DNA of 64,000 bases, taken from Iphione sp. A-MEVVRFRX5 (taxonomy: Eukaryota). Below the pieces are notes generated by a model. The model was not told the DNA's origin and searched no databases. It was given only the letters and a program-made list of their open reading frames with translations. The translations under genes were made by a program, and so were the position numbers. Of this stretch, positions 54,201-57,200 are shown piece by piece (the stretch's first letter is position 1; each line of letters opens with the position of its first letter). The stretch is from positions 22,816,001-22,880,000 of the forward strand of contig OZ320319.1 in the NCBI GenBank assembly GCA_976226885.1, written 5' to 3'.

Positions 54201-57200
54201 TTAGGATATGAAAGATAAATTTTTAAAACCAAGCATAATTTCGCAATTTAACCTATCAATGAAAAGGTTTGCTACCGCTCCCATAAAAACTGCATCTTGA
54301 CCAACAAACTAAGGTGGTCAATGAAAAAGAATAAAATTTCAGATAGAATTTATATATCTGAAACACTTTAAAGTGAATGTATAATAACGCTTCCCATAGC
54401 CTAATCTCACTAGCACATAATCAACTGATTGAATAGTAATCGGTTATTCTTCTGGTTAATCATTAAAATTGTGTTATTTCAACGATTCTATTTCGATGCT
54501 CAAATCTGTTACCGGGAAATGTCTTTATCTGACACATTTGCAAACGACTGTGTATTCTCGACTACCTTTACAAGACAATGAGCAGAAAATAGCGTCGACG
54601 AAAACTTGTTAAATAGTAAGACAAATGACGGAGTTCGAGATGGCATTTACCAGTATGTATGAGTATATGACCAGATAGTACTTACCTTGAAGGTTCCAAT
54701 CATGGCATCGGATCTCAACTTCCTTGAATTGTAGACCTGTGTAAACATACAAAAATAACATTTTTTTCTGACATTCATACATGATATATTTTTTATATAA
54801 AGTATATTGACACTATTGTATAGAGGTCCATTATTGGGGAAAGCGTTGTATTAATAAACGTATTTGAGAGGTAACAGGTTGCACATAGCTTGCTCCGCTA
54901 AAAGGTTGTACTTAATGAAGGGGTGTTTTCCTTGAACGCCTGTACTTGATGCTTATTTTTCCATATAAATCGACAAGTTTAAACACTATTTAATGATGCT
55001 ACTTGGTTTAGCTCGAAAAGAATCACAAACACTCTCACATCTGGAACACTGGCCAAGTCTACAATAATCGATTTCAAGCTAATTCTAGAGAACCCTTGTA
55101 AAATGTACACAGTCTCCAAGCGATCCACCCATTTCCTAAGTAGGCTATTATGGATATCCCGCTATCCGGACAGCATTGGCCAACACCCCCCCATGTGTCC
55201 GTGATAGTGAGATTCCATTGTCAGAAGTTAGAACAAACTGTTGGTTTTTTTTCCGGTAGGACCAGCTTCTGATATTGCTCCTCTGTTTACCGGACCTGGC
55301 AAGCACAGGATTCCTGTGATAAGCAGAGAATACACTAGTTTCAAAGTTACACATTTAGTGGTCCGAAGTGGTAGTGGGGAGCAGTAAAAACAAACTATTT
55401 CGAGTGGCTACTCACGGAAAAGACAATGAGCTCATCAAACAGCTCGGCTGGTGAGCAGAAGAAGTTGAAGAAGAAGACCTCATTGAAGAAGGGCGAGTTG
55501 GTCGACTTCTTGACACGGGTTTGTTTAGTCTGATTGTAGCAGGTGATTCTTGCCACTGGACTGATGTTGGCTCCAGGAAGTTGGCGAGCTTCGACAACTT
55601 TTACACGAATCTGCATAAAAAGAAAGAGATTCAGTGCCTTATTAATGATTTGGCTTTGACTGTATGAAAGGAAACAAAATGGGCATAACCATATGAAAGG
55701 GGCCTTCCAGATGAAAGGCAAGAACATTAATGGAGAGAAATGTCCACCGTGCTGAATGATTTATACAAGTTCCTCTTTACTTTACTTGACTATTCACAAA
55801 ACTTCTCCGGAACTTGCCGATGATGTAGGGCGGGTGTTTTTTGTACATTATCCTTTATTTGAATGATTCCATAACTCTGGTTCTTCTCTGTGTTCTCGCC
55901 TGGCACTATGATCCCCCCCTCCCCAGGCGGCGCCACCACCTGGAACCGTGTATCCACACAGCTTCACCAGCATTCAAAGGCGTAGCCGGGCAGTTGTGTT
56001 TTCTGCCTTTTCCCTCAGTCAGTGTCTCTAATTATTTGATCCAGCCTTCCTAACTGTTGTCATGTATTCTTATCTATCTGGAACTCAAATCAACCCCTTG
56101 GCATCCCTATTCCCTACGGAAACAGAGCAATTAAATACGAACTTTCAACGATAAATGGGATGAAAAACTATGAAACATAACCTAAACCACCTTTCAGTTC
56201 TACAGGACTACCAAATATATACATCCACGGAAACAATAACAAGAGGAGAAATTCTTTTCTGACCAATACTGGCCAAGACCTGCTTCTGTACCTGCCAATC
56301 GCAAGCCTTGTTGGGGTCTCTCTCCCCTGCTGACCGTCGCGCGAAATGTAAATTGCCAAGCTTCGAGTTACGCCCTCTATTCACCGAGGCGTCGTCACTC
56401 ACGGTGCCGTCCGATTTTGCGATGTCAGAAGAAGCCTTGGGGGCTTCAGTGATGACAGTAACTCCCTTTGCGTCGACGGCAGGGATGGCGCGTTCCGGGG
56501 ATTGTCTACTCTGTGGTTCATGAACGGGTGCCGGGTCTTCAGCCCCACCCAGAAGGGGTTCCCTCTCCTCATCCATGGCCGGACGGTGCTGGGTGTAGTA
56601 GGTCCTGCAGTTTAAATCTTGTAAGATATTGCTCACGTTGTTTGCAATCTGAAGATGGGCAGGCTTTTTTCTGTTACGTGTGTGGGTCTCTTACATCTTT
56701 ACCAAGCCAAAACCCTTCATGATGAGTCATGAAGTCTTTGATGAACCTACATCACCGCCAGTAAACCGTGCAATTCTGTACAGGTTCTGAAAGGTTCAGG
56801 GTTAACAGTCGCTTTGCTGCATAGAGAACTGTCAGTCTGTAGATGCCTGAATGTCATTTAAACGCAACACTGCATAACCCAGGAACTAAAGTCTATGTCT
56901 GGGTAAGCATGTCCAGGGCAAGTTGTGAAAACACTTAGAACTACTGTTGCGCGAAATGATAACCCATCACATGACTGGGCGGTCGGCAATGTCGGAATAT
57001 GGATCCATTGAGCAGTACAAGTAAAGGTCCGCCTCGCCGGATGTTCCGACGGAGAATGAAGAAAATTGTATTCATATGGGCACTCACTGTACCCGCATCT
57101 TATGTAAAGCAGGTAATGGCAATCTTGACCTGCTCTCCCTCCAGCGTGTCTTACGATCACGACGGTCCATGTATACGCAGAACCCAGCTACACCGCTGCA

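What the first reader, a model, noticed from the sequence alone, without database searches (positions are those of the whole stretch)
56292..57170. Alternative C2A-less N-terminus with an acidic dileucine motif, ending in a paralog of the C2B entry motif
Seen: gccATGg opens [11 protein letters not shown]..., 95 codons ending PNKACDWQ|, which parallels SNKPQDFQ| of the standard linker exon and splices in phase onto IRVKV. An acceptor at 56604 (phase 2) is matched by a consensus donor at 57088, adding [10 protein letters not shown]...[12 protein letters not shown] in frame. Established: [DE]xxxL[LI] motifs such as EREPLL bind AP-1/2/3 and direct endosomal/lysosomal sorting. Inference: an internal promoter yields a ferlin lacking C2A and the E/K linker and rerouted to endolysosomes.
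Basis: partly seen in the sequence, partly recalled or inferred. Interest (0 to 1): 0.75.

Follow-up and report, generated by a model that had tools for sequence, protein, structure and literature searches.

The report
Alternative first exon in ferlin gene
An intron of an invertebrate ferlin (membrane-fusion) gene probably holds a second start exon that would make a protein lacking the usual front end; similar exons sit at the same spot in related animals, but no RNA data could be obtained to prove it is used.

Summary
The sequence features are all present. ATG 56576 (GCCATGG) opens 95 codons on the minus strand. They end NKACDWQ at 56292, followed by a GT donor, and join in phase 0 to the first C2B exon (IRVKV, 55610).

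The ending fits the family-wide K-x-x-D-[FYW]-Q that precedes C2B in human dysferlin, myoferlin and otoferlin. D[FYW]Q|GT occurs only four times in 128 kb. The frame is open for 133 codons upstream (P about 0.001-0.012).

- **Support from relatives:** three related metagenome contigs (about 82% identical in the C2B exon) each carry an ATG-initiated ORF of 82-113 codons just upstream of C2B, ending Q|GT in phase 0. One contig, L019, also keeps the standard E/K linker exon.
- **Promoter signal:** in the window, L019 and L009 the exon coincides with the local CpG maximum.
- **Reading:** a real alternative first coding exon driven by an intronic promoter (confidence about 0.6).
- **Not supported:**
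  - The 57088 upstream mini-exon is at chance level.
  - EREPLL is absent from the related exons.
  - The peptide has no detectable homologues.
  - Similarity to the linker exon stops at the last eight codons.
- **Not testable or not seen:** no sequencing runs were listed, so splicing is untested. No C2A exon lies in the window.

The parts
56292..56576 (-). Predicted alternative first coding exon (CDS part): 95 codons, [11 protein letters not shown]...NKACDWQ, then donor CAG|GTACAG (GT at 56291-56290).
   Evidence: translation. (motif rarity). (open-frame probability). (no predicted secondary structure). (analogous exons in L019, L014, L009).
56292..56312 (-). N-K-A-C-D-W-Q codons. They fit the K-x-x-D-[FYW]-Q pattern that directly precedes [IV]R[IV] of C2B.
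   Evidence: dysferlin SDKPQDFQIRV, myoferlin [11 protein letters not shown], otoferlin GRPMDYQVSI. (relatives).
56550..56567 (-). EREPLL, an acidic dileucine consensus [DE]xxxL[LI] at residues 4-9 of the predicted leader.
   Evidence: P = 0.044 in shuffles of the peptide; 0.0045 within the first 15 residues. Absent from the canonical linker exon and from the L019, L014 and L009 exons.
56577..58250 (.). CpG-dense, GC-rich patch directly upstream of the ATG; candidate intronic promoter. It has the densest CpG of the whole 64-kb window.
   Evidence: 48-55 CpG/kb against a mean of 23. The same coincidence is seen in L019 and L009. No Pfam or homologue hits for its ORFs. No terminal repeats.
57088..57170 (-). 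Not supported.
   Evidence: three donors in 56660-58400 give equally valid ATG-open in-frame joins to acceptor 56604. Weak Kozak context (T at -3).
55416..55610 (-). First C2B exon ([13 protein letters not shown]...IVFS), the shared acceptor for both upstream exons.
   Evidence: Pfam C2, 1.7e-9. (dysferlin 1e-28). (relatives).
60171..60360 (-). Standard E/K-rich C2A-C2B linker exon, ending SNKPQDFQ|GTAGGT. The acceptor is either 60360 (strong tract, carries 2 bases) or 60328 (carries 1 base, as in L001 and L003).
   Evidence: Conserved in L001, L003, L004, L010, L019.
50105..50273 (-). FerI-encoding exon downstream, confirming gene identity.
   Evidence: PF08151, 43.3 bits against a cut-off of 28..

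Best explanation
The interval holds a genuine alternative first coding exon of a DysF-type (type I) ferlin gene. It is nested in the 4.56-kb intron between the E/K-rich linker exon and the first C2B exon.

Proposed mechanism:
1. Transcription starts in the CpG-dense patch at about 56.6-58.2 kb (inferred).
2. Translation starts at ATG 56576 (inferred).
3. The 95-residue disordered leader ends K-A-C-D-W-Q and is spliced in phase 0 to IRVKV (frame shown; use inferred).
4. This re-creates the conserved K-x-x-D-aromatic-Q-[IV]-R-V start of the C2B domain.

The product would lack everything encoded upstream: the acidic/basic linker, and C2A if this gene has one. That gives a FER1L6- or misfire-like 'disordered leader - C2B ... 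TM' ferlin.

The leader's N-terminal EREPLL may bind AP complexes. That is a separate, weak sub-claim (about 0.2).
For: - **Entry motif:** it matches the family-wide pattern and is very rare in the window. The frame it defines is open for 133 codons. The ATG has an optimal context, and no upstream ATG lies within 115 nt.
- **L019:** it carries both the canonical linker exon (..LSDKPQDFQ|GTGAGT) and a second ORF of 82 codons ending DKSTDFQ|GT, 127 nt before C2B. An in-frame TGA lies two codons before its ATG.
- **L014:** it has a homologous exon (BLASTP 6e-5 to L019's alt exon, no alignment to L019's canonical exon). It is also preceded by an in-frame TGA.
- **L009:** it has a 113-codon ATG ORF ending Q|GTATAA.
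- **Background rate:** such ORFs occur at about 0.014-0.03 per kb in 351 kb of control sequence.
- **CpG:** the local maximum coincides with the exon in the window, L019 and L009.
- **Context:** the gene is a ferlin (C2, FerI, FerA, FerB). Alternative promoters and C2A-less ferlins are known (PMC1853072, PMC9333456, PMC2974636).
Against: - No RNA evidence is available; no sequencing run was listed.
- The leader has no homologue in 1.84 billion representatives or among short proteins.
- It shows no significant similarity to the L019 or L009 exons. Orthology therefore rests on position and architecture only.
- The donor is weak.
- Relatives at 58-78% identity have short introns without such an exon.
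- The frame stays open for 38 codons above the ATG, so internal use is not excluded.
- L009's exon lacks the D-aromatic pair.
- GC-rich sequence inflates ORF lengths; a 171-codon ORF lies on the opposite strand nearby.
Confidence: 0.6

Rival explanations
1. The exon is real but internal. It would be a mutually exclusive alternative to the E/K linker exon, spliced from the same upstream exon, so C2A is kept and only the linker is swapped. This would resemble vertebrate alternative splicing of the C2A-C2B linker.
For: - The frame is open above the ATG through AGs at 56606-5, 56619-8 and 56650-49.
- Acceptor 56604 has the same phase as the strong linker acceptor at 60360. 56617 has the same phase as 60328. 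In each pairing the exon lengths agree modulo 3.
- Vertebrate ferlin linkers are alternatively spliced, and the dysferlin alternative linker exon adds an acidic dileucine ETWSLL (bioRxiv 10.1101/2025.03.15.643383).
Against: - In L019 and L014 an in-frame stop lies two codons before the ATG, and no usable acceptor follows it.
- The polypyrimidine tracts before 56604 and 56617 are poor.
- The optimal Kozak ATG and the CpG maximum are left unexplained.
- The upstream donor phase is unknown because that exon could not be identified.
Confidence: 0.12
2. It is not used. It would be a decayed duplicate of the linker exon's 3' end, or a chance ORF in a GC-rich insertion, that merely looks splice-competent.
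For: - The donor is weak.
- There are no homologues.
- GC-rich patches carry long ORFs on both strands.
- L001 shows that the exon end plus donor can be tandemly duplicated (57 nt x 4.5).
- No RNA data are available.
Against: - The joint probability of motif, phase and 133 open codons is about 1e-3 to 1e-5.
- The conserved motif positions are retained while the variable ones differ.
- The ATG, frame and GT are all intact.
- ATG-initiated exons recur at this position in three relatives.
Confidence: 0.22
3. It is an independent small intronic gene. The ORF would be translated unspliced, from ATG 56576 to the stop at 56208-56210 (122 aa).
For: A continuous ORF runs to a stop 27 codons past the donor. 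It has its own CpG-rich upstream region.
Against: - No homologues or domains were found.
- It does not explain the ferlin-specific K-x-x-D-W-Q|GT at exactly phase 0, nor the same arrangement in L019 and L014.
Confidence: 0.03

Closest known systems
C2A-less ferlins: vertebrate FER1L6/FER1L4 and Drosophila misfire (Mfr)
   Same: The predicted product starts with a disordered leader that runs straight into C2B. FER1L4 and FER1L6 'begin with C2B' (PMC9333456). FER1L6 keeps a disordered N-terminus (bioRxiv 10.1101/2025.03.15.643383). Mfr has C2B-C2F and tissue-specific promoters (PMC1853072).
   Different: Those are separate genes, or the only form of the gene. Here it would be an isoform of a DysF-type gene that also encodes the standard E/K linker. 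There is no sequence similarity in the leader.
Human dysferlin alternative linker exon (adds ETWSLL) and the otoferlin linker dileucine
   Same: An alternatively used exon immediately upstream of C2B introduces a [DE]xxxL[LI] motif, proposed to bind AP2.
   Different: The vertebrate exon is an internal cassette within a retained linker and C2A. Here the exon replaces the linker and is probably a first exon. The motif is not conserved in related exons.
Alternative first exon of human DYSF; short OTOF transcripts
   Same: Ferlin genes use more than one promoter or first exon (PMC2974636; PMC1853072 discussion).
   Different: From my own knowledge, the DYSF alternative exon 1 still encodes the start of a C2A domain, and OTOF short forms start much further downstream. 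Neither enters at the C2B boundary.
N-terminal or proline-containing dileucine signals: invariant chain 2-DDQRDLI-8, LIMP-II DERAPLI, tyrosinase EEKQPLL
   Same: 2-DEEREPLL-9 has the same N-terminal position as the Ii signal. It has the acidic cluster plus Pro at -1 seen in the AP-3-binding LIMP-II and tyrosinase signals (PMC8620429).
   Different: Those signals lie in short cytosolic tails close to a membrane span. Here the motif is about 2000 residues from the C-terminal anchor. No binding or conservation evidence exists.

Membership tests
Ferlin gene, type I (DysF-containing) | C2 domains plus FerI, FerA, FerB motifs | tested here: met
   C2 1.7e-9. FerI 43.3 bits against cut-off 28. FerB 75 bits; FerA 28.5 bits, below cut-off 33.9. 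Best PDB match is dysferlin at 1e-28.
Ferlin gene, type I (DysF-containing) | DysF domain | tested here: inconclusive
   The only hit is to Pex24p (PF06398), taken here as a DysF-related Pfam family (from my own knowledge): 26.3 bits, just under the 26.8 cut-off.
Ferlin gene, type I (DysF-containing) | N-terminal C2A domain in the canonical isoform | tested here: inconclusive
   No C2A exon was found in 60400-64000. It probably lies beyond the window. C2A-end exons are seen upstream of the linker exon in L003 and L004.
Alternative first exon with internal promoter | Start codon with in-frame splice to the shared downstream exon | tested here: met
   GCCATGG at 56576. 95 codons, phase-0 donor, phase-0 acceptor at 55610.
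Alternative first exon with internal promoter | Transcription start and junction reads | not testable with these tools
   The look-up of sequencing runs listed no run, so read laying could not be used.
Alternative first exon with internal promoter | Promoter-like chromatin or sequence signature | tested here: met
   Densest CpG patch of the window lies directly upstream. The same coincidence occurs in L019 and L009. This is an indirect signature only.
Alternative first exon with internal promoter | Presence of the same arrangement in relatives | tested here: met
   L019 (with the canonical exon also present), L014 and L009. Absent in relatives at 58-78% identity. Sequence orthology to the window's exon is not demonstrable.
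Acidic dileucine [DE]xxxL[LI] AP-binding signal | Consensus motif in an accessible cytosolic, disordered segment | tested here: met
   EREPLL at residues 4-9. The AF2 single-sequence model has no secondary structure and pTM 0.16. Ferlin N-termini are cytosolic (established knowledge).
Acidic dileucine [DE]xxxL[LI] AP-binding signal | Conservation of the motif in equivalent exons | tested here: not met
   No [DE]xxxL[LIM] in the L019, L014 or L009 exons, nor in L001's ATG ORF.
Acidic dileucine [DE]xxxL[LI] AP-binding signal | Binding to AP sigma hemicomplexes; LL-dependent localisation | not testable with these tools
   Requires experiment.
Exon duplicate (paralog) of the linker exon | Significant sequence similarity between the two exons | tested here: not met
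   Local DNA and protein alignment scores lie within the shuffled range. Only N-K-x-x-D-x-Q is shared. Indirect precedents: the L019 alt exon keeps an acidic-then-K-run layout, and L001 has a 57-nt tandem array of the exon end.

The most novel reading that the evidence does not exclude
A clade of invertebrate DysF-type ferlin genes carries an internal promoter plus a first exon that arose by duplication of the linker exon's 3' end. This would be a living intermediate of the route by which C2A-less ferlins (FER1L6/FER1L4, misfire) evolved. In this species the new leader would further have gained an Ii/LIMP-II-like N-terminal dileucine signal that sends the short ferlin to endolysosomal or lysosome-related organelles.
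Probability: 0.12. Interest if true: 0.6.

Novelty: new variant of a known kind. Interest (0 to 1): 0.42.

Why it matters
If the exon is used, one ferlin gene would produce two proteins. One has the standard N-terminal module. The other enters directly at C2B with a different disordered leader.

In the myoferlin cryo-EM structure, a linker helix just upstream of C2B stacks between C2B and C2C (PMC12264198). The C2A-C2B linker also carries membrane-binding and endocytic motifs (bioRxiv 10.1101/2025.03.15.643383). Swapping this segment could therefore change both ring closure and trafficking.

The recurrence of such exons in related contigs suggests a route to C2A-less ferlins. It also gives annotators a recognisable signature: an ATG ORF ending K-x-x-D-aromatic-Q|GT upstream of C2B.

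Tried and rejected
- **RNA evidence:** The look-up of sequencing runs on the exon listed nothing, so read laying was unusable.
- **Homologues of the leader:**
  - Word search with the 142-aa ORF found none.
  - The exhaustive representative search with 104 aa found 0 hits.
  - A degenerate DNA pattern for [11 protein letters not shown] in metagenome contigs found 0.
  - tblastn against all fetched loci found nothing.
- **Foreign origin of the GC-rich patch:**
  - No Pfam hits for five ORFs on both strands.
  - No homologues for the 171-codon plus-strand ORF.
  - No direct or inverted terminal repeats.
  - No Rfam family.
- **Recent duplication of the linker exon:** rejected for lack of similarity.
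- **Shared promoter words** between the window, L019, L009 and L014 upstream regions: none.
- **Identifying the exon upstream of the linker exon:** only a guess was obtained (candidate ending 61806, phase 1). Intron phases differ among relatives, so first-exon versus internal use could not be settled by phase.
- **Taxon:** not determined. The only named relative is a Dreissena polymorpha fragment at 65%. The accession prefixes were not found in papers.
- **Fold of leader plus C2B:** not run, because the spliced protein has no reference.

Full report
**What is there.** The minus strand of the window carries a ferlin gene.
- The first C2B exon is 55610-55416 ([13 protein letters not shown]...IVFS|GTGAGT). 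Pfam C2 scores 1.7e-9, and human dysferlin matches at 1e-28.
- FerI, FerB and a sub-threshold FerA lie downstream, with a borderline hit to Pex24p, which I take to be DysF-related.
- The standard C2A-C2B linker exon, an E-run followed by a K-run, ends SNKPQDFQ|GTAGGT at 60171.
- In the 4.56-kb intron between the two, ATG 56576 (GCCATGG) opens 95 codons ending PNKACDWQ at 56292, followed by GTACAG.
- Both exons end in phase 0, so either can join IRVKV.

**Is it more than chance?**
- The PDB search shows that the residues before C2B are conserved across the family. Dysferlin has SDKPQDFQIRV, myoferlin [11 protein letters not shown] and otoferlin GRPMDYQVSI. Invertebrate relatives have S[NT]K[AP][QT]DFQ. 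The core is therefore K-x-x-D-aromatic-Q.
- The alt exon keeps exactly these core positions (K, D, W, Q) and differs at the variable ones.
- D[FYW]Q followed by GT occurs four times in both strands of the window. These are the canonical site, this site, and two sites with 15 and 45 open codons.
- That rate gives about 0.07 expected by chance on the sense strand of this intron.
- With the frame fixed by that site, 133 open codons upstream has P = 0.001-0.012 under first-order Markov models of local composition.
- ORF length alone would not be convincing. The patch is about 50% GC and also holds a 171-codon ORF on the other strand.
- The donor is weak, at the 94th percentile of all GTs on a rough PWM written from memory.
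- There is no DNA or protein similarity to the linker exon beyond the last eight codons.

**The upstream mini-exon.** Of eight decent donors in the 1.7 kb upstream, three give ATG-open, in-frame joins to acceptor 56604. Others fit alternative AGs at 56617 and 56648. The 57088 match is what chance gives, and its ATG has a poor context. I do not count it as part of the feature.

**Relatives.**
- No sequencing run was listed for the exon, so splicing could not be examined.
- The leader peptide has no homologue in the word search or in 1.84 billion representatives.
- Orthologous loci were reached through the C2B exon.
- Relatives at 58-78% identity (L001-L004, L010, L013, L015-L017) have linker-to-C2B introns of 240-1690 nt without a second exon. 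L012's 4.2-kb intron holds long ORFs that look like a mobile element (not checked against Pfam).
- The three closest contigs (about 82% in the C2B exon) behave differently:
  - **L019** has the canonical exon (..KGHLSDKPQDFQ|GTGAGT, ending at 2070). It also has a second, ATG-initiated ORF of 82 codons (3985-4230) with a K-run, ending IEVEVDKSTDFQ|GT, 127 nt before C2B. An in-frame TGA lies two codons before its ATG.
  - **L014** has a 94-codon ATG ORF ending FAIDLDKETDFQ|GT, 97 nt before C2B, again with a TGA two codons upstream. It aligns with L019's alt exon (6e-5) but not with L019's canonical exon.
  - **L009** has a 113-codon ATG ORF (strong Kozak context) ending DADKYKLCQ|GTATAA, 972 nt before C2B.
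- In 351 kb of control sequence, ATG ORFs of at least 80 codons ending CAG|GT occur at about 0.014-0.03 per kb. Four in the short sense-strand stretch upstream of C2B is a clear excess.
- The four leaders align only at M1, one R, the K and the final Q (alignment A1). Pairwise BLASTP between the window's leader and those of L019 and L009 is not significant. The support is therefore positional and architectural, not proof of orthology.

**Promoter signature.**
- 56250-58250 is the densest CpG stretch of the entire window, at 48-55 per kb against a mean of 23.
- In L019 the CpG and GC maximum lies 250-700 nt upstream of the alt ATG.
- In the strongly CpG-depleted L009 locus, the local maximum coincides with the alt exon.
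- L014's genome is not CpG-depleted and is uninformative.
- In animals with gene-body methylation, such islands mark unmethylated promoters. This is established knowledge, applied here by inference.
- The patch shows no sign of a transposon or another gene.

**First exon or internal exon?**
- The stops just before the ATG in L019 and L014 argue for a first coding exon there.
- In the window the frame remains open for 38 codons above the ATG. AGs at 56606-5, 56619-8 and 56650-49 would allow internal use in phases 2, 1 and 0.
- The linker exon itself has two candidate acceptors. One is at 60360 (strong tract, carries 2 bases). The other is at 60328 (carries 1 base, the phase seen in L001 and L003).
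- The exon upstream of the linker could not be identified. No C2A exon lies in the window.
- A mutually exclusive 'alternative linker' reading therefore stays open at about 0.12.

**The dileucine.**
- EREPLL fits [DE]xxxL[LI]. It is the only LL in the peptide, it is absent from the canonical linker exon, and it arises in 4.4% of shuffles (0.45% within the first 15 residues).
- Its position resembles invariant chain 2-DDQRDLI-8. Its acidic cluster with Pro at -1 resembles the AP-3-binding LIMP-II and tyrosinase signals (PMC8620429).
- Vertebrate ferlin linkers carry proposed AP2 dileucines, one of them added by an alternative dysferlin exon.
- Against it, none of the analogous exons has such a motif, and nothing could be tested. 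I rate this sub-claim at about 0.2.

**Structure.**
- The leader is predicted to have no secondary structure (single-sequence AF2, pLDDT 65, pTM 0.16). This is weak evidence for disorder.
- In myoferlin, a linker helix (residues 173-190) just upstream of C2B stacks between C2B and C2C (PMC12264198).
- The canonical K-run probably corresponds to that helix (inference). The window's alt exon has only a degenerate basic stretch there.

**Verdict.**
- The mini-exon, the 'paralog' claim and the lysosomal rerouting are not supported as stated.
- It is a new variant of known kinds: alternative ferlin promoters and C2A-less ferlins.

An earlier follow-up on this window (s1-353838) also reported having no RNA data, and I found the same.

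Noticed in passing
L001:8363-8619: A 57-nt unit repeated 4.5 times (94% matches) duplicates the last 12 codons of the linker exon together with its donor, in frame. It yields three intact RGALSNKAQDFQ|GT copies, which are potential alternative donors, and shows how the exon end can be copied.
   Followed up: partly
L001:7475-7741: An ATG-initiated ORF (MADQLPDGLRL..., good Kozak context, A-rich rather than pyrimidine-rich upstream) lies 460 nt before the E/K linker exon. 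Its phase-1 donor (ATAA|GTAAAA) fits that exon's phase-1 acceptor. It may be a different kind of C2A-less start in a more distant relative.
   Followed up: partly
window 56280-56291: A second in-frame CAG|GT lies 12 nt downstream of the alt donor (..DWQVQKQ|GTCTTG). It is weaker than the first, and its GTCTT resembles L019's alt donor GTCTTA.
   Followed up: no
window 61806-61908 (minus): Candidate linker exon ...SKLKPSDTPSACKPSPSKPTAKPR with a consensus donor (c|GTAAGT, phase 1). It joins the linker exon at 60328 in frame, but not at the stronger acceptor 60360.
   Followed up: partly
window 56975-57487 (plus): 171-codon ORF on the opposite strand inside the CpG-rich patch. It has no Pfam hit and no homologue, so it is probably a by-product of GC-rich composition.
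   Followed up: yes
L014:2066-2736 and L019:4358-4435: In these two contigs the first C2B exon is split by an extra intron after ...ANISPVTR. This intron is absent from the window and the other relatives.
   Followed up: no
L012:580-4227: The 4.2-kb linker-to-C2B intron of this relative is filled with long ORFs that look like a mobile element (endonuclease-like motif). It was not checked against Pfam.
   Followed up: no
window 2852-3341 and 21130-21372: Tandem arrays with a 31-nt period (about 16 units) and a 61-nt period (4 units) lie in other introns of the gene.
   Followed up: no
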